A DNA stretch of 63,489 bases, counting the filler, from Reticulomyxa filosa (Eukaryota; Protista; Foraminifera), in assembly GCA_000512085.1 (NCBI GenBank). It is 10 parts of 10 records of this genome, joined end to end, with 100 filler letters (N's around TTAATTAATTAA, not from the genome) between each part and the next. Parts side by side here need not be neighbours in the genome. Positions count along the whole stretch, not along the records: positions 20,121 to 30,930 come from ASPP01005251.1; 9 more parts are not named here. One strand, written 5' to 3'. Every line of letters starts with the position of its first letter. Position 1 is the first letter of the stretch. The notes below the pieces were generated by a model. It was not told where the DNA came from, did no database searches, and saw only the letters and a list, made by a program, of their open reading frames with translations. Below, piece after piece: positions 20,121 to 31,139 of this stretch. The position numbers and the translations under genes were made by a program.

Positions 20121-20128
20121 TGTGTGTG

Positions 20129-20159
<31 letters not shown>

Positions 20160-20222
20160 TTTTTCCAACAAATATATGTAGTCAATTGAACATTATACGT
20201 ATACATATATGTATACACGTAC

Positions 20223-23200
20223 ATCCTCCATCTCCATTTGAAAGAATACAAAACTTGGCTAATGGCTGGCACAGCAGAATATGTAACAAAGAAGTCGAGC
20301 GGACCATAAGGGACTTGGGTCAACGAAATAAATTGATCGTGTTCAATTAGTCGCTTGAGTGACCACAGATATGTCGGCATATCGGGCTTTGGGGAATTGG
20401 CGACAAATTGATGATACTTTTCACACATTTCTGTCAAACGCAAGCCAAAGTAACGCTGAGCAAACAAAGACTTGAGGACTTCCATTGTGGGCAATGTTTC
20501 CGTTTCCGTGTGCAATTCCTTTGAACTGAAATCGGTGATACGTTTGGTCAACGTTCGATCACGAGGAGTCCAGTAGAACCCCAGCAACTTCTCCGTTTCA
20601 TTCACAAAGCTACGGTTGGAAAGCTTGGTATTGGACAAGACAATTTCAAGTGAGACGTCGTTGCATATCTCTGAATGTTCGAGGATATTTCGCATATCCA
20701 GAGCGGTTTCAATCTTCCAAGTTTTTTGAGGGGACACAAAAGTGGAGGCACTTGCACTTTTGTCGATTATTGAAAATTTGAGCCAAGGAAAACAACAAAT
20801 GGACCGCAACAAATACAGGGATGAGGCTTGGGCGTACATTTTGGGATAAAGCCTACGCAAATGCATGTCCAAGTCTTCAAAGAAGAGACCCTTATCGACC
20901 ACTCCCAAGTCGCGGATGACATGTCGTACGTGTCCGGCCAGAGATGCAGGTTTCCTTTTTTGATACAAAATGGACGGACTTGTGGAAACAACTTGCACAA
21001 AGTCTAAACACCAATCCCTGATTTCGCGATGCTCAATTTCTGGGAATGTTGGCATTGGATTTTCCCTTTGGAGATGCAACCAGCCACTTGTGTCTGCGTC
21101 GTCATGTCCATTGCTCGAATATGTCGGATGAATCAGTCGATTGTAAATAATGTCATTCAAATCGTTCAATGACACCGAGTCCTTTTGCGATGACAAATAG
21201 TCGAGTGACATTCGAACCAAAGCTCTCCTCAATTCCACGGCATTCTGTGCGACCAGGGCGTCGTTGTCGCGCAAAGGCATTACCGCAAAGTTGTTGTTCG
21301 TCAGGTAATCGTAAAGGGTTGCGAACCTATCCTTACTTTCTATCGGAAGCAAATGAAACCCCGACAATTGAGAAAGCAATAGTGTTCCATTCTCGCAAGT
21401 CGACAAGGTTTGTTTGACCTTAAGCAAAGACGATTTTGCTTTCTCCTATAAATAAGTATATATTGACGTATAAAGCCTATTTACAATTTATTTACCAAAA
21501 CTATATATGTACATACATATACATATATATTTATATATAAAGTAACAGGATCAAGCATTTTTGTATTCAAATCTCGGAATTGAAATTTCGATACTCGGCT
21601 GTTGGCATCATGAAGCGTGGTGACATGGAACCACAGTTCATTGAACACGGTGTTCAGCACTTGATTATCTGTGGGAGGGATCGAGTTTTGATTTTGTTTG
21701 GCCCAAGCCTTGACCCCTTCCAGCAAGGTGTCGATGGGCACTTGGGCTTCGTCGGCCATCGCCAAAACACTGACGATATGACGTTGCACGGGAGAGAGCC
21801 AGTGGACTGCTGTGACGACAGGATAAGCGTCGTAATTATTATCTTCGAAGGATCCGTTCACAGTGTACATGCCCGTCGATTGCAGAGCATGTTTCAAATT
21901 GGGAGTCACGATCACGACATCGAACACAGAGTGTATTTTGCGTTGGAATATGTAAAGTGGAAAACGGATTTGGTTCAGCCATGTCATCGCCAATGCTGTT
22001 TCCACGGTAACGCTTTGCTTCTGTGACTTGTATGGCACCAATGGATTCCAAAGCTTTATTTTCAATTGATCTTGTGTACGCGTTATTTGCAAATCCAAAG
22101 AGAAGCTTTCAACAATGACAGACAGAAGGGATGACGTTGACAAATCCTTGAACTTGCTCCATTGGCTTAGATGCTGCTGCAAGTCTTCGATTGACATTTG
22201 CAATGACTTATTGCTGCAAAATGCGGCCAAAATGCAATCTCGAAGGAATTTGGTTTGATCATTCAAGTTCGAGATTGCAAGACATTTTTGCTTAAAGAAA
22301 TCCAAATTCTCAAACTTTACTACGAAATCAGGGTACCACTTTGCGGAATTCAAAGACATGGACAGAAAAGGCATCAAATGCCGTGGCGGTCTGCGTAGCA
22401 ACGACGAACAATCAAAAACAACAGAGCGTGAGCGACTTTCTTGAGTCATTTGTTTACACCAAAAATTGTGTAAGTCACTCAGCCTTATGGTATTATTGTG
22501 AGCATCCATTTGACGGTCTTTGACCAACACCTCAAGCATTTCTTCCAAACTTTGATAATTTGTGATTGCCACGTCGTTGTTCGTTGTGACAGTTGTCGTG
22601 TTTGCAGTGGATGGAAGATTGCGCAAGGAAAAGTAATACTCGTCTCTGGCCTCATTGTGCTCGACCGCGAATTGATGCGGATAGTGTTGCAACAAAAAAC
22701 GAGTGACGTGAGGATAGTGATCAAAAAGGAAGGCACACTTTTCGTTGGCTCTGTTCCAAATGCCTTCGCTGTCTTTGTCACAAATACGTTCCTGTTGCTC
22801 CAACATGTTTATCATGGTTTTCACGAACTGACGCAAGGCAGGGAGCAAGTTGAACTTCTTCCACTCCATGTTACCAATGATAATATCCGACAAAGAGAAG
22901 GTCAATGTCTTGGTCGGATCACTGTTCAATATTGTACGCAGCGTCGAAAATGACATCAACAATGGCTCTCGTACATATCTCGATAGCGCTGTTGCAATTG
23001 ACTTACGTTGACATATACACGCTGGTCCAGCAAATCCAGCAATCGATTGAAAATCTCCTCCGAATATTGCTTGCTGGGCTTTTTCGACCGTGGCTCAAAA
23101 TATGGCTCCTCCGACAAAGTGGAGTCCAGGTGCACGCAAATGCCTGGCAAACGTTCAAGCTGTTGGATCAAGTTTTGATGGGAAGGGAAATACACTCCAA

Positions 23201-26200
23201 AGCGTTGTATGAATTCACTTGCAGCTGCGATATACGCATCGAGTCGACATCCATGGTATACAATATATGTAATACCAATCGATTCAATAATCTTGTGTCT
23301 TGCAGTGATTGGAACTCAGGACGTATTTGAACCATCCATGGCCGATGTGAATGTGTGGTAGATCGCTTCAATTTCACAAATGGGAGCATCAGCAACTCGC
23401 CCAATGTGTCCAATGGGGTGGAATGCATTTGAGCCAATGACTCCAACAAAAGAGACATTTCCATGGGCTTGTTTTTCAATTGAGTAAATACATGTCGAGC
23501 AAAAGCATTGACGTCTGTGCCATTGGTCGCTTGCAGTCCGACCACCGCATCCGCATTCCATTCTTTGTGCTCCTGTTTGATCCAAAATAACTCGCTGCAT
23601 TGATTGCACAAATGATAGAGAAACTGATACGAATTCAAAGGCTTCAAATCTGGATACTGCAATTTCCATTCATTGCAAATTTGCAAAGCAGTCAGACTGC
23701 CATTGGGCTGCTTCATAAGCAGACTTTCTATTAATCCTCCAAACAAATTCTTATTCGAATTGGATATGTAGTAGTCCCCATTTGGCAAAGGCACACGTGG
23801 CAAAGATAACTTGTCCAACAAAGGTATCCAAGGAATGAAATATCCAAACCGCTCACGAAACAACGAACAAAATTCAGACAGCTTAATGTACTTTGTATTG
23901 CGATTGACATTGTGCACAATCTCGTTCATTAATGTGGCGATCTGGGCGTCTGTGTTTCCTTTTTGAGATCGATTACGAAGAATTGTCTCTATGTTCATTG
24001 TGGTAGTGATGGTATCTTTGGTATGATCTTGCCTTGACTGCGTTGCGAATGAAGGGACAGGCCAAAATGAAAAAGATCTTTCCTTTCGTCCATTGACATT
24101 GAGCTCTTCTTTTATTTCGATATCTTGATGGCAATTGTCGAGTACGTACGAAACCACTTTGGACACGTCGTTGTCATCCAATGTCAATTGCAGGTTTTTC
24201 TTAGTCAAATTTATCCAATCTGACTCTAGGAGTTTGTGTGGATAGTGCGTTTCAATGGCTTTGATTAATCCCAGCACATTGACTGGAAGCGAATGAGTCG
24301 ACTATGGTTAAGCATGAAAATCGAACACATTATTTTGTTCAATGTTTGTATTAACAAAATACAAATAAATGAACAAATATATAACATATACATATATATG
24401 TTTATATAACTGCTGGCTCTAATTGTACAAATGGAACAGAGTCATGGATGACAGAGAAGGAAAACCATTCAAAGAGCAAGTCCAATGGGAGACTCGATTG
24501 CTGAAAATGTTGAAAGAACAGATCACCAAATTGTTGATGCAGCATGGATGGGACAATACACAATGGCACCATGCGCAAATTGTCTTTTGTCCAAAAATGT
24601 CGCTCATTTGCACATCGATCCAACACAGCTTCGATCGAACGACGCACCGGCAAAGGACTGTGAATGGGATGAACAGATGTGGCTGTCGGGACCGAGTGCA
24701 TGGGACTCTTCAGTTTAATGCAAACATTTGACTCGAGAAAGTCCAATGCATTGGCTAAGTTGTTTCGATATTTGGTAGGGATCAAAAATGTATCAAACTG
24801 TTCGATAAAACATGCATGATGCAAATACTGCAAGCTTTGAGGAGAATAGCAATGAAATGATTTCAACAATACAAATGCTGTTGGACTCGCATCTGATGTT
24901 GATGATATATCGTTAGAATAGCAAAGTTGACGAACAATCGCTTCATTGAGAAGTCTTTCGCGCCAATAAAAATATTTCATGATTCCATGATGCGTGAGAT
25001 TATACGCCGATAGTTGATTGATATTTTTCCAAGTCACAAAGAGATCAGGAAAGGTAGTGGCATTCGACGATGGATCCAGTTGTATATAAGGCTGAATTCT
25101 GTGCTGTAACCAATCCAACATCAAGAGATAATTGTTATAGTTTTTGGATGCATTGTGATGGCGAATATGTTTTGATCGTGTCAACAAATTCGACAAATTG
25201 GGATCGTACTGCAACAAGTGATGTTGGAGAGAAGACAATGCGATACCATCGGGACACTTTTGTATCAAATGTTCCAACCACATTTCCAGAGATGAATAGT
25301 ATTGATCATTGTACACACTTTTTTCATTTGATATGTAATAGCGTATTCCGTCACGATACTGCACATCAATGGCTCTGGACAACGTGACAGTGGACAATAT
25401 GGCAGCACAAAAATCTGCGTCATTGCCGTGAGTGGAATATGGAAAGGCAACTGAATCCAACAATCCAATCGGCCATCGCGTTCGAATTGCTTCAAAGGTG
25501 AGTCCTATTGTATTCGACTGTTTCAACATGGAGATCAACTTTTCATCCCAAGTTTGGGTTTTTGATAGTTCAAAGTTCGGGCCTGTTTTCCATTTAAAAC
25601 CATATGTGTCCACTTTGGTGCAGTGATTGGGTAACATTTCCATGCCATTCGAACCAGAAATAAACATTTTGTGCAAATTGAAAGCATTACATTTGCTCAT
25701 TTGAGCATTATTCAACACGCAAGATATGATTTGCAAAAAATAATCATTTCGAGACGAGTTCACTTTTTCGACCTTTGTTTGTAAATGCTGTTCACTCCAT
25801 TCCATTACATCACGTTCAATTTTGTTTTCCATTTGTCGGTCCATCGTAAAGACGCGCAATGACAGATTCGCTACATTTCGATAGAGAGTGAAGATGATTG
25901 TCTTGTCGACATTGAAATAAGTTTGCAGTTGTTGCATCAACTGATCCGACAGAGCCAAACTATTACTCACAAATTTGGGGGGAATAGTGATATCAAAATC
26001 GAGCATGGTTGGAGTCTTGACATACAATTTGTTATCTTTAGCAACGATATCACAGCCATGGCCTTGCAAGAATTTTTGCATATCCAATGTCAGACAAGGC
26101 GCTCCAAAAAGCGTTTCGAATTCGTCTTGAAATTGATTCAAATCCAACAGGTTTTGTTTTTCTTTGACTCTTTCGCTTAAGTAATACCAAAATGATATCA

Positions 26201-29200
26201 TGGGTTTTTTCACTTCTTCCCATTGATACAGGGTGTTCAATCGATTTTTACTGTTTGATGAAATTACCAAGCAGGGATTGGTAAGCAATATTTCCAATGG
26301 CATTTTCGATTGCCCTCCGAATTTGGATTCCCATCCATTGGCCAGCTCGCTATAGGTGAACCGAATGTCCGAAGAGGGTGTGTTGGGAGTGTGAAGACTG
26401 CCAAACACAAAACGGAGCTTGGTCATTGCTGGAATGCGATCAGCGGGAGAATGCGAAAGCTTTGGTCGTAATGAATAATTCCATGTTTTTTGATCTTTGT
26501 TCCATTGAAATGTCAAGATATGAGAAAAGTGATTGTGCATATTGTCCAAATACTTTTTTATTTCTGAAATATCGGACTGGGTCATTGAATCAGGTGACAA
26601 TTTGGAGACAAGTATGTCTTTCAATTCTTTCTTGGTCATCTTCTGATTTGGGACACTAAGCATTGCCTGTTCAATGGCATTACAGGTGTCCACATAAGAC
26701 TGTGGCAATAACAACTCTAAATTCAATGGATACGGGGCATACAAAGAGAAATGTGGCGTGCTTGCAATTAACGCTTCCAATGTTGCATAACCATACTTGC
26801 TTGGCTTGACCATGGGAAATTTTGCACAAATTTTAGATCGAATATTCAAAATTGATGGCTGTTGCCAAGTGTGCCCATAGGTCATTTCATGCACAATTGC
26901 AGCAACACTGGCATAAAGCTCTTGCAAATGTGGAGATACAAACAATCTTATATTCCATTGATTTGTGAGATTAACGTCAATTTGTGGCATTGTATTCATG
27001 ATTTCTAATGCCGTTTGCACCTCTCGTGACAACAGCGAATCCAATGCATCATTGGTCTCACTTTCCAATTCATCCATAGTAGCCAGTGCTTTTTTTTTGG
27101 ACAACTTTGAGTCTTTTTTTTGTTTATGGGTAGCCTCTTCAAAGTGAAATCGTTCTAAAAAACCAGGCATTGCATTTCGCACAAATGCGACGATGGCGAA
27201 CAAGGGCACTCCTTGTCCGTTACGTTGATCAAGCCGATCAAGTTCTTGGAACATCATCTCTTTCAACTCATTGAAATGTCGACGCTTGACAACAATAGGG
27301 TCGTAATCGGGGTCGGCAAATGTAACGGAAAGATCTTGCTTGCAATGAAGTAAAATCATTTGAAACAAATTTGTGTTTTGATCGATCATTTTGGGAGCAT
27401 CGATCCACGTGCCAAAGTGTTGTATCAACTTGGGTTGAATCTGTGACAGATGCAATCCATTGGGATAAAAATCACAAATCATTTGAACAATTTGACTTGT
27501 AATTTTCTTTACATCTGTTTCGTGATGAGGAATGCTATTGATTTTATCTTCGCTGCGATAGGACAGGAATCGTAGCCAATTACCTCCCATTTTATCCGCT
27601 GATGCATTGTCCCCAGAAGCAAGGGACTGGGATTTGAATTGGACTTCCAAAAACGGGTACCAATCTTCAATGATCATTTTCATGCAGAGCTTATGAGAAA
27701 ATGGCAAACTCGTTTCAGCATAACTGAGATAAAGATTTTCCAAGTCTGCTTCTGGAATGGCCAAAGTACCATGCTGCAAAATGGGTGGATATTTCCAATG
27801 GATTCGAGCATTCAACCATTGTGGATTGTCTTGGCAATAGATTAACAAATCTACAATATTCTTCCAAAAATGCTCTTGTTGTTGCCGTTTTTTGGACTTG
27901 GAGAATTGGGTCGTCATTGCCATGTCTTCCGCTTCCAATATCGATTTTGCAGTATACGTTGCAAATGAAGTTTCGTTAATACGTTCCGTTTTTGTTGGCA
28001 TCGATTTTTTGCTTGTGCTCGATAAGAGCAACGGAGGAGATGTGGACGTGAGTAAAGAAAATTTGTGTGCAATGATGCATTGAATCGGTCTTGGGATGAT
28101 CAAGTTCAAATTGGTTGCATCAAACTTTTGAAGAAATTCTGGCAAGGATATGCCATCCGGACAATGAAAAGGATGACTCAAATAAATAGATGGATTCAGC
28201 CATTTCTTCACATGCCACATTTCCACATCAAAGCTTTGATTATCTGTGTGGTCAGTTGAGACCCGAGTCATCGTCGACAAAATATTGGCGTCTGTAAAGT
28301 TACAAAAATAGCTGTTGGCAATGGCTCTCTTCAACAGCTTCTCCGTGATTTTGTAGCGATCCACAGTGCTGGACTGGAGTGGCTCTCCAAACAATATCGG
28401 CTTTGCTCTTGTTTCATCCAGACTCAAGGCGCCCGATGTGAATACATTCCATTCCAAGTCGTGGACGTTCGATGACGACAGATCCACTTCCTTTGCTTTG
28501 TGTTGGCATTGCTCGACCTGGTCTAACCAGTCCACATAATTCATGAGCAAATCCAAATGGCTCAGCTTCCCATTGAAAGTGACCACATTTGGAGGGATTA
28601 CTTTGTACTCAATCAACGGTTCATCACTCGGACTTTTACCACCAACACGAGATGCATTGCCGAGGATTTGACCAAACCATGAATTATTTTTGTAACTATT
28701 CACAATGATATTTTGAATCCACACACTGCAATCAACTGTTATCCCCTTTTATTATTATTATTATTATTAATTATTATGTTATTATTATTATTATTATAAA
28801 TAAATAATTATAATAAAAATTCTTACACATGTGTATTTTCTTTGGAGGAGAAAAAAAAAAACCTGACTCAAATTTGGTAATAGCAAAAAATCTTCGAGAG
28901 GCTTTCCAATAGTGGCGTCAATTCGCTTGCACAACAAATCGTCGAGAAAGTGTAGCGTAAAATAATCAAAGTAGTGATGAGGAGACAAGAGTGGAGGGAG
29001 GCTAGGTTTGGATGGGTCGCTGTCATGGACAGATCGAGACGATGGGAAAAAATGAGAGGCGATGACCTCGTCCAAATGCTCGTGGTACAACGAAAAGTAG
29101 TAATTTTTCAACAGACTGAATTTGATACCCTGCGGGAAGTCCGAGGTAATACAGAGTATCTTATCTCTTTCTGTCAAAGGCATTAATTCAATGATCAGGG

Positions 29201-29852
29201 ATTCGAGTGCAAAACGAGCATCCCCAATACCTTTGCTCGATACACTGGTGATCATGACTGGAATATAATACGGATGCGAATGGTTTGCAATGGCTGATAT
29301 GTCGTCTTTACTCTCATTGTACACTACGTCCAACACTTGGTTGCTCGTTGGCAATTTACTTCGATCAATCCATTCCATGCTCTTATTGTTTTGATCCCAT
29401 TTCTTCACCTCTGTCGATAACATATGTTGACAGTCATTCACCAAGTGCAACTTCAATTCTGCATATCTTCGATCTCCACTCACTTTCATGTACCAACTTT
29501 TTTCTTTCCGTTCGCCAAAGATTCGCATAAAATATGGCTTGAATATTGACACCACACAAGTGCTGGCACTGGTGTGGGTGCAAAATAAGTTTGCTCGTCC
29601 ATACATGCCTGGCCTGTTCGATATCGTCTTCCTATCATTTTCTGCTGATTTGGATTCGGAAAGATTGGACAATTGTCTTTGTGTTGGAGTCAATGCTGTT
29701 GTTTGGAGCTGAGTTTGGCTGTTTCGCACTTGCACACTTGGAAGACTGCTCATTGCTTTGTTCCAAGTTGTTCCTTGTGCTCGAAACACTCTCTGTAATT
29801 TCCTGCCATTTCTAGCACGTGGCGAAACATGGTGACCTTCCAAAATTTTCAT
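20223..29852 (-). CDS. Giant (>=3100 aa, 3'-truncated) protein with many OST-HTH/LOTUS-like winged-helix repeats; exons 29852-28863, 28745-24411, 24301-21547 (two 1-bp frameshifts), 21445-20223
   Basis: Phase-0 GT-AG introns link all ORFs. Recurrent motifs include PQGIKFSLLKNYYFSLY, PDGISLPEF, YPNGLHLSQIQPKLIQHFG, FPMVKPSKYGYATLEALIASTPHF, PDGIALSSL and IKLSEFCSLFRERFG. The gene model is solid; the domain call is by eye. Confidence 0.7.
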
Positions 29853-30476
29853 TTTTTATTATGATTATGATTGTTGTCCTTTCTATTCACATTAGCAAGA
29901 GAGAAAAGAGGGTTCGTGATATATTTGAACCTTCATCTCTTCTAAAAGAAGTTCCAAACGAAAACTTACCCTGTTCTTATTGCGTAGTCTATTTTAATTC
30001 ATTAATGTTAAAAGAGAAACAAGAATATAGGAACAATTTGCAACGGGAGACATTTTACCAAGATTTTACTATTTTTGGATAAAAAAATAAACCGTGGTAG
30101 CTTTTTTTCTAAAATTCAAAAAAAAACATAACCAAATTTTTTCCATATGTTTCAAAACCAAAAACATGTTTACATTTTTCACTGCTTGTAGATGTTATTT
30201 CAAACAAGCGAAAATAAAATTGCAAATGTCAGTGTGCAGTCGGTTGTGTCACTAATGTTGGCAAAAAGGTGATATTTGTTATGCATATGTTTTTTGTGGA
30301 GTAGTTAACAATAGTGCTAACAGCAATTTTTGGTGAAAAGGATAAAACAAATAAACAGATGTTTAAAACTTAAACATATGTTTTTACAAAAGTAATTAAA
30401 GCTGTCCAATTCTTATCAGTCTTAAAAAAATGAAAAGAACAAAAGAAAAAAAAGTAACAACAATAAATAAAAAAAA

Positions 30477-30913
30477 TCAGCTACAAGAATCTGAAGAACT
30501 GGAAATAATCTCCGCCACAAAAGATTCAGTACAAACAAAGAACATAACAATGCCAAATCCGCTGATGCAATAAGCAAGAATTTTTTCTTTGGTAGTGACA
30601 GTGGTATACGCGGGACCTAATTTGACGTACATCAATGGTGGCAAAATCAATCCTAACACATTGTTTCCAAAGGCGCCAGTAAGTCCAGTGAGCACCTGAA
30701 ACGAAGGGACAAGCAAAGCAATACCACAAGTGGCAAATACCAAAATGCCGCGCAAAATATTTCGTTTAATTTCAATGCTTCGCTCCCCAAAGGTCGCAGG
30801 GTCCCACAAAGTACGTTCCAGCGATTCCGTTACGGGGAACAAAAACAGGGCATAGGTAAAAAACAAATCTGCACTTAAGAATATTTTCACCAGAGTCTTA
30901 ATGACACCGCTTT
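30477..30913 (-). CDS. Amino acid/auxin permease (AAAP/SLC36-like) transporter, last exon only
   Basis: FTYALFLFP, ALLVPSFQVLTGLTGAFGNNVLGLILPPLMY and hydrophobic TM helices. The 5' part is lost at the spacer. Confidence 0.85.
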
Positions 30914-31139
30914 CTATTCAAAAAAAAAAANNNNNNNNNNNNNNNNNNNNNNNNNNNNNNNNNNNNNNNNNNNNTTAATTAATTAANNNNNNNNNNNNNN
31001 NNNNNNNNNNNNNNNNNNNNNNNNNNNNNNAATTGGATGTTATAAAAATGAATTTGATTTTGAGTTACTTTGGAGACATTAAGTTGAGTAGTTGAAAAAA
31101 TATATTTAATGCATTCTTAACAGCAACAAAACATGACAG

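What the first reader, a model, noticed from the sequence alone, without database searches (positions are those of the whole stretch)
20223..29852. Giant protein built from a long array of divergent OST-HTH/LOTUS-like winged helices
Seen: four exons totalling ~9.3 kb (>=3100 aa, still open at the gap). At least a dozen motifs of the form (P)xG-hydrophobic-x-L-S-x-L...(Y/F)xxx(F/Y)G recur along the whole length: FPQGIKFSLLKNYYFSLYHEHL, CPDGISLPEF, YPNGLHLSQIQPKLIQHFG, GQGVPLFAI, FPMVKPSKYGYATLEALIASTPHF, FTYSELANGWESKFG, CPDGIALSSL, VPLCIVPSMLHQQFG, IKLSEFCSLFRERFG, PNGSLTALQI, RISQLQSEFIQRFG, VNVSQLQQRYRDMY, YFGLRLTEM. Known: LOTUS domains (Oskar, TDRD5/7, MARF1) bind RNA or DEAD-box helicases in silencing granules. 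Inference: this is an unusually long LOTUS array with no visible NYN or Tudor domain, possibly a scaffold for an undescribed RNA-granule or transposon-silencing system in a protist.
Basis: partly seen in the sequence, partly recalled or inferred. Interest (0 to 1): 0.8.

Follow-up and report, generated by a model that had tools for sequence, protein, structure and literature searches.

The report
Giant multi-LOTUS protein of a foraminiferan
A giant single-celled amoeba (Reticulomyxa filosa) has one very large gene, split into three "hypothetical proteins" in GenBank, that carries at least ten copies of the LOTUS RNA-binding module known from animal germ-granule proteins, but what it does in this organism is only inferred.

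Summary
The piece is R. filosa contig ASPP01005251.1, where GenBank calls three genes (1777, 372 and 867 aa). They most likely form one minus-strand gene of at least 3,091 codons: four exons, three AT-rich phase-0 GT-AG introns, 3' end lost at the contig edge. A codon model places them independently; no reads were listed to tell assembly error from mutation.

LOTUS identity holds. Exon 2 passes Pfam's OST-HTH cut-off. One modelled unit best matches TDRD5/TDRD7 LOTUS (Z 9.7/9.6); another is a winged helix with MARF1 LOTUS as tied top hit. About ten units have statistical support across all exons, against 6-8 in MARF1.

New here: a KH-fold domain lacking GxxG at the start of exon 2 (low-confidence model), and two distant orthologues with the same domain order. 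No NYN, Tudor or RRM was detected. Best reading: a nuclease-free, multivalent RNA-binding scaffold working like Drosophila MARF1; function is inferred. A new architecture of a known domain family.

The parts
28863..29852 (-). Exon 1 (330 aa, ATG at 29852). The first 225 aa have no family hit; LOTUS-like unit U1 is at its end.
   Evidence: matches GenBank RFI_06225
28746..28862 (-). Intron 1, GT-AG, phase 0, 117 nt, 88% AT
   Evidence: orthologue P0002 aligns across this junction in one ORF
24411..28745 (-). Exon 2 (1445 aa); Pfam OST-HTH 35.1 bits, E 1.2e-8 (sum of weak stretches)
24302..24410 (-). Intron 2, GT-AG, phase 0, 109 nt, 80% AT; GenBank instead ends RFI_06225 here
   Evidence: not confirmed by RNA or by an orthologue
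21547..24301 (-). Exon 3 (about 919 aa when read with X at two frame changes)
23210..23219 (-). Frame change 1 (-1), inside LOTUS-like unit U18
   Evidence: codon-model switch at 23210; the unit scores 19.8 bits when read across it
22966..22975 (-). Frame change 2 (-1), just after the second helix of unit U19
   Evidence: codon-model switch at 22975
21446..21546 (-). Intron 3, GT-AG, phase 0, 101 nt, 82% AT
   Evidence: GenBank's 867-aa model has the length expected from this intron
20223..21445 (-). Exon 4 (397 aa to a donor at 20254, or about 407 aa to a donor at 20222); the gene continues past the contig end
28503..28745 (-). Predicted type-I KH-fold domain without the GxxG loop (P0001 330-411), 38% identical in the orthologue
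   Evidence: (vigilin KH12 Z 7.1, tied with secretin N domain Z 6.9); model pLDDT about 45-59, no sequence-level KH hit
28863..29170 (-). LOTUS-like unit U1
   Evidence: leave-one-out p 0.04, conserved in P0002; fails the full-HMM leave-one-out
27558..27824 (-). Probable winged-helix unit U3 (H-E-H-H-E-E in the model; conserved in both orthologues)
   Evidence: pLDDT under 50; not supported by the profile
27276..27533 (-). LOTUS unit U4, the best supported
   Evidence: Pfam E 0.054; TDRD5 Z 9.7, rmsd 3.3, 80 aligned; TDRD7 Z 9.6, rmsd 2.6, 76 aligned; p 0.003
26730..26915 (-). LOTUS unit U6, with the KYG motif
   Evidence: Pfam E 0.0025; the orthologue piece P0003 scores 27.5 bits, above the cut-off; HMM leave-one-out 0.005
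26529..26702 (-). Probable unit U7
   Evidence: HMM leave-one-out 0.035; three helices in the model; not supported
26004..26219 (-). Winged-helix unit U9
   Evidence: MARF1 LOTUS Z 7.2, tied with other winged helices; p 0.023
25074..25304 (-). LOTUS-like unit U12
23738..23944 (-). LOTUS-like unit U15
   Evidence: 23.8 bits on first recruitment; p 0.003; HMM leave-one-out above all 200 shuffles
23085..23296 (-). LOTUS-like unit U18, spanning frame change 1
22850..23069 (-). LOTUS-like unit U19, spanning frame change 2
   Evidence: p 0.017; HMM leave-one-out 0.07
22036..22257 (-). LOTUS-like unit U22
   Evidence: p 0.023; fails
20726..20944 (-). LOTUS-like unit U27, in exon 4
   Evidence: p 0.003; fails

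Best explanation
One gene encodes a cytoplasmic scaffold of more than 3,090 aa made of at least ten (possibly about twenty) divergent LOTUS-type winged helices plus at least one degenerate KH-fold domain, with no catalytic domain in the sequenced part. It most likely works like Drosophila MARF1. The tandem LOTUS units bind structured or G-rich RNA with high avidity, and some units act as docking sites for mRNA repression or decay factors (deadenylase, decapping complex or a DEAD-box helicase), so bound transcripts are gathered into RNP granules and silenced or stored.

Shown: gene structure, LOTUS family membership of U4 and U6, winged-helix fold of U9, recurrence of the unit in all four exons, and conserved domain order in two other organisms over residues 230-1050. 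Inferred: the intron-2 join, that the frame changes are assembly errors, the KH fold, RNA binding, partners and granule localisation.
For: Pfam OST-HTH above cut-off for exon 2 and for an orthologue piece. Among 48,161 chains, U4's best matches are TDRD5 and TDRD7 LOTUS, with Oskar, Tejas and MARF1 LOTUS further down; the top Atlas shape hit is an OST-HTH cluster and the Atlas feature hits with a family are led by OST-HTH (scores under 0.9). Seven further units beat shuffles. The KH-fold match adds a second RNA-type module, and OST-HTH/KH fusions are documented (PMC2848206). LOTUS domains from bacteria, plants and animals bind G-rich and G4 RNA (PMC7498356). Tandem LOTUS domains recognise targets in human MARF1 (PMC7279887) and recruit CCR4-NOT in nuclease-less Drosophila MARF1 (PMC6168497).
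Against: No expression, localisation or binding data; no sequencing run was listed. Both models have low mean confidence (pLDDT 34 and 41) and Foldseek gave nothing at E<=0.001. Most units have no Pfam hit of their own, and U9 matches generic winged helices as well as LOTUS. The KH lacks GxxG and ties with secretin N domains. The C-terminus is missing and could hold an enzyme. The gene has two frame changes.
Confidence: 0.5

Rival explanations
1. The protein is a LOTUS-array enzyme (MARF1/limkain-type NYN ribonuclease, helicase or ubiquitin ligase) whose catalytic domain lies in the missing 3' exons or is too divergent to detect in the first 225 residues or another unmodelled stretch.
For: The gene is open at the contig end. 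NYN, RING and U-box fusions to OST-HTH are common (PMC2848206). About 2,000 residues were never modelled.
Against: In MARF1 and in bacterial proteins the nuclease lies N-terminal to the LOTUS units, and exon 1 has no NYN hit or NYN motif.
Confidence: 0.15
2. The array is a DNA- or protein-binding winged-helix scaffold of another kind (like TFIIIC tau138/GTF3C1 or RNA polymerase III subunits), and the LOTUS likeness is limited to a few units.
For: U9 ties with MCM8, ESCRT-II, Rpn12 and ORC winged helices. Tau138 eWH appears at Z 6.5 and RPC5/RPC62 among weak Foldseek rows. ASFV I73R scores Z 8.2.
Against: The only family passing a curated cut-off is OST-HTH. LOTUS structures lead the next non-LOTUS match by 1.4-1.5 Z. 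No TFIIIC family hit in any exon.
Confidence: 0.12
3. The locus in R. filosa is a recently broken copy (pseudogene), with two real frameshifts; only the part up to frame change 1 could still be made.
For: Two -1 changes 250 nt apart; no reads were listed to check them. The orthologous pieces also show breaks: a stop at a Tyr position in L002 and overlapping fragments on the GCA_024449935.1 contig.
Against: No in-frame stop in about 3,090 other codons, strong frame-specific codon signal in every segment, intact splice sites, and no second copy found. Single-base losses are a common draft-assembly error (general knowledge).
Confidence: 0.13
4. GenBank is right: these are two or three separate neighbouring genes, each with a few LOTUS-like units.
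For: GenBank models of 1777, 372 and 867 aa; orthologue evidence reaches only about residue 1080.
Against: The 109-nt gap after exon 2 is an AT-rich phase-0 GT-AG intron like the other two. The 250 nt between GenBank genes 2 and 3 is coding in the third frame, and units U18 and U19 run across the breaks.
Confidence: 0.1

Closest known systems
Drosophila MARF1 (one RRM plus six tandem LOTUS, no nuclease; PMC6168497)
   Same: Tandem LOTUS array, an RNA-recognition-type module near the N-terminus, no detectable nuclease.
   Different: At least 3,090 aa with ten or more units; KH fold in place of a demonstrable RRM; no sequence similarity found; rhizarian.
Human/mouse MARF1 (limkain b1: NYN, two RRMs, eight LOTUS; PMC6294520, PMC7279887)
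   Same: Large protein dominated by tandem LOTUS; MARF1 LOTUS is the tied top fold match of U9.
   Different: No NYN or RRM detected; more units, much more divergent from one another.
TDRD5/TDRD7, Oskar, Tejas (LOTUS plus Tudor or OSK; PMC5458760)
   Same: U4 is structurally closest to TDRD5 and TDRD7 LOTUS (Z 9.7, 9.6).
   Different: No Tudor or SGNH domain; those proteins have 1-3 LOTUS domains; the helicase-binding C-terminal extension could not be identified.
Egalitarian (three LOTUS-like winged helices, mRNA transport adaptor; PMC13186709)
   Same: Several divergent LOTUS-like units; Egl appears among fold matches (Z 6.6 and 6.2) and Atlas feature hits.
   Different: No exonuclease-like domain found; many more units.

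Membership tests
OST-HTH/LOTUS domain proteins (PF12872) | Score above the Pfam gathering cut-off | tested here: met
   Exon 2: 35.1 bits against 23.8 (summed over weak stretches of 13.8 and 18.1 bits alone); orthologue piece 27.5 bits
OST-HTH/LOTUS domain proteins (PF12872) | Winged helix (three helices, two strands) closest to solved LOTUS domains | tested here: met
   U4: TDRD5 Z 9.7, TDRD7 Z 9.6, Oskar 7.8-8.4; U9 winged helix, LOTUS tied
OST-HTH/LOTUS domain proteins (PF12872) | Ghxph motif in the insert between helices 2 and 3 (PMC2848206) | tested here: inconclusive
   Clear only in U6 and its orthologue copies; absent from the other units
OST-HTH/LOTUS domain proteins (PF12872) | Binding of G-rich/G-quadruplex or structured RNA | not testable with these tools
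   needs a binding assay
MARF1/limkain b1 | NYN nuclease N-terminal to the LOTUS array | tested here: not met
   No Pfam NYN hit or NYN motif in any exon; 3' end missing; fly MARF1 also lacks it
MARF1/limkain b1 | One or two RRMs before the array | tested here: inconclusive
   No Pfam or PDB RRM hit for residues 1-228; an RNP1-like look at residues 85-160 is by eye only and was not modelled
MARF1/limkain b1 | Six to eight tandem LOTUS domains with sequence similarity to MARF1 | tested here: not met
   About ten or more units; the search of 1.84 billion representatives with residues 600-1770 returned only three relatives, none of them MARF1
TDRD5/TDRD7/Oskar (eLOTUS) | Tudor or OSK domain | tested here: not met
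   No Pfam hit; 3' end missing
TDRD5/TDRD7/Oskar (eLOTUS) | C-terminal extension helix that binds a Vasa-type helicase | tested here: inconclusive
   The helix after U4's hairpin looks like the first helix of the next unit; model too weak to decide
Type I KH domain | Beta-alpha-alpha-beta-beta-alpha fold | tested here: inconclusive
   Model shows E-H-H-E-E-H; vigilin, FBP, KSRP, MEX-3C and OOEP-complex matches at Z 6.3-7.1, tied with secretin N; low pLDDT
Type I KH domain | GxxG loop | tested here: not met
   Absent here and in the orthologue

The most novel reading that the evidence does not exclude
The protein holds some twenty or more LOTUS units interleaved with several GxxG-less KH domains, by far the longest LOTUS array known, and is the lineage-specific organiser or transport adaptor of mRNA granules in the giant multinucleate reticulopodial network of foraminifera: a counterpart of animal germ-granule scaffolds and Egalitarian that evolved independently.
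Probability: 0.15. Interest if true: 0.7.

Novelty: new variant of a known kind. Interest (0 to 1): 0.42.

Why it matters
The LOTUS arrays described in the papers read here have at most eight units (MARF1), and the original survey did not list Rhizaria among the lineages with the domain; no held paper mentions both LOTUS domain and Reticulomyxa. A conserved LOTUS array of more than 3,000 aa with a KH-like module in a foraminiferan would extend LOTUS-based RNA control to a lineage with huge multinucleate cells, and give a first candidate for how they store or move mRNA. In practice it corrects a gene that GenBank splits into three. It remains a domain-architecture finding with no functional data, in an organism that is hard to manipulate.

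Tried and rejected
Sequencing runs: none was listed, so read laying could not be used on the frame changes or introns.

Word-index homologue searches found only the protein itself or nothing. JGI metagenome and IMG/VR scans found no relative. PDB sequence and profile searches gave nothing significant, NCBIfam nothing, Foldseek nothing at E<=0.001.

An unseeded motif finder did not beat shuffles. A full-length HMM passed only 6 of 13 units in leave-one-out.

Hidden introns as the cause of the frame changes were rejected: every bridging GT-AG candidate is at most 60% AT, against 80-88% for the real introns. A PIN/XPG-like reading of the start of exon 2 was dropped because the model gives a KH-type fold. 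Further KH-like starts seen by eye (P0001 about 462, 1246, 1648) were not supported by hhalign, Pfam or PDB. There are no DNA-level repeats between units.

The joined full-length protein was not built, searched or folded. Exon 3 was scored across its frame changes only with X at each break, in local scripts.

Full report
Source and gene structure. The piece 20121-30930 is identical to GenBank contig ASPP01005251.1 of Reticulomyxa filosa, assembly GCA_000512085.1. GenBank calls an amino-acid transporter fragment and three further genes of 1777 aa (RFI_06225, here P0001), 372 aa and 867 aa. On the minus strand I find four exons: 29852-28863, 28745-24411, 24301-21547 and 21445-20255/20223. They are separated by three GT-AG introns of 117, 109 and 101 nt, all in phase 0 and 80-88% AT. 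After exon 4 an AT-rich stretch runs into poly-T and a TG microsatellite at the contig edge, so the 3' end is missing.

Frame changes. Exon 3 is not one open frame: it passes through all three frames. A frame-aware Markov model trained only on exons 1 and 2 puts the best two switches at 23210 and 22975 (38.5 bits, against 17.0 for a single switch). These lie within 10 nt of the positions suggested by the protein motifs. No AT-rich intron can bridge them. Read with X at both breaks, the exons total 3,091 codons with no stop. A LOTUS-like unit runs across the first break and is the second-best recruit of the profile. I infer single-base assembly errors in one gene, but no run was listed, so a recent pseudogene is not excluded.

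LOTUS identity. Exon 2 matches Pfam OST-HTH at 35.1 bits, E 1.2e-8, above the cut-off of 23.8. Alone, the two contributing windows score 13.8 and 18.1 bits, and no other window hits. An AlphaFold2 model of residues 226-1072 from four sequences is poor overall (pLDDT 41), but unit U4 is locally moderate with winged-helix topology. Against 48,161 chains its best matches are TDRD5 (Z 9.7, rmsd 3.3, 80 aligned) and TDRD7 (Z 9.6, rmsd 2.6, 76 aligned), then ASFV I73R 8.2, Oskar 7.8, TDRD7 LOTUS 2-3 7.6, Tejas 7.2 and MARF1 6.6 (same order). In a separate single-sequence model, unit U9 (26219-26004) is a winged helix with MARF1 LOTUS first at Z 7.2, tied with unrelated winged helices.

How many units. 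A two-block profile seeded on U1, U4, U6 and their orthologue copies recruited seven more units (25244, 26147, 23887, 23239, 23012, 22197, 20887). Block shuffles gave 1.3 on average and none of 100 reached seven; the reversed sequence gave four; at a looser threshold the excess faded. Leave-one-out scoring of 28 candidates passed nine at p<=0.05 (partly circular, since the core set was recruited by the same model), and U6 is independently a Pfam stretch. A full-length HMM passed six of thirteen, including U7. U3 has winged-helix topology at low confidence. A fair count is about ten supported units in all four exons, two more probable, and up to about twenty by eye. An unseeded finder failed.

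Second domain type. The first 80 residues of exon 2 model as E-H-H-E-E-H and match type-I KH domains (vigilin Z 7.1 and 6.8, FBP and KSRP 6.6, MEX-3C 6.3, OOEP-containing complexes 6.5-6.7), tied with secretin N domains at 6.9. The GxxG loop is missing here and in the orthologue, and there is no sequence-level KH hit. This is a lead at moderate confidence. No NYN, Tudor or RRM was detected.

Relatives. Word searches found none, so the large search was used once, with residues 600-1770. It returned three sequences. P0002, from an ENA metagenome contig, is collinear over residues 230-1050 at 25% identity and crosses intron 1 in one ORF; its stop falls at a Tyr of P0001 and homology continues to the contig end. 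P0003 and P0004 are consecutive pieces on one contig of GCA_024449935.1, and P0003 passes the OST-HTH cut-off. The organisms are unknown. No MARF1 or TDRD protein and no R. filosa paralogue appeared. Exons 3 and 4 were not covered by the large search.

Mechanism. [quoted passage not shown] Human MARF1 uses its central tandem LOTUS domains to recognise targets, and MARF1 proteins have six to eight (PMC7279887). Fly MARF1 lacks a nuclease and recruits CCR4-NOT through LOTUS (PMC6168497). Vasa binding needs a C-terminal extension (PMC5458760), which I could not identify. Egalitarian uses LOTUS-like units to read RNA stem-loops for transport (PMC13186709). The anatomy here fits a nuclease-free, multivalent RNA-binding scaffold that docks repression or decay factors (confidence 0.5). 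Rivals are an enzyme domain in unseen parts (0.15), a pseudogene (0.13), a DNA- or protein-binding winged-helix array (0.12) and separate genes (0.10). Nothing supports transposon silencing specifically.

Verdict. The protein is a member of the OST-HTH/LOTUS domain family and works, by inference, like fly MARF1. It is not a member of the MARF1 or TDRD5/7 families by their defining features. The domain label was already assigned automatically to exons 1-2. The single giant gene, the unit count above eight, the KH-like module and the orthologues were not found described. New variant of a known kind; interest 0.42.

Limits. The spliced model was searched exon by exon or through the stored protein P0001; the joined full-length protein was not built, searched or folded.

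Noticed in passing
window 30229-30917, minus strand: 3' part of an amino-acid transporter gene (Pfam Aa_trans, E 5e-16), ending about 380 nt upstream of the LOTUS gene's ATG; no sign of a link.
   Followed up: partly
L002 2552-2554: The orthologue P0002 ends at a TAA that aligns with a Tyr of P0001, and the same frame stays homologous to the contig end: probably a sequencing error or a nonsense change. It is the only in-frame TAA in 830 codons, so not an alternative code.
   Followed up: partly
GCA_024449935.1 contig of 2521 bp (no DNA served): The second orthologue is called as overlapping pieces of 238, 216, 207 and 60 aa; the last two may match downstream units but could not be fetched.
   Followed up: no
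window 29600-29370 (P0001 about 85-160), minus strand: By eye resembles a degenerate RRM (RNP2-like and RNP1-like stretches); no Pfam or PDB support and not modelled.
   Followed up: partly
window about 28350, 26000 and 24795 (P0001 about 462, 1246, 1648), minus strand: Three further stretches begin like KH domains without GxxG; hhalign, Pfam and PDB searches did not support them.
   Followed up: partly
window 28862, 24410, 21546, 20254: The three donors, and the one implied by GenBank's last model, all begin GTT rather than the usual GTA/GTG; alternative GTA donors lie near 28827 and at 20222.
   Followed up: no
window 27533-27276: African swine fever virus I73R is the closest non-LOTUS structure to U4 (Z 8.2), and the top Atlas feature hit is an OST-HTH cluster whose commonest recorded phylum is Nucleocytoviricota (5 members with a record); a lead on LOTUS-like domains in giant viruses only.
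   Followed up: no
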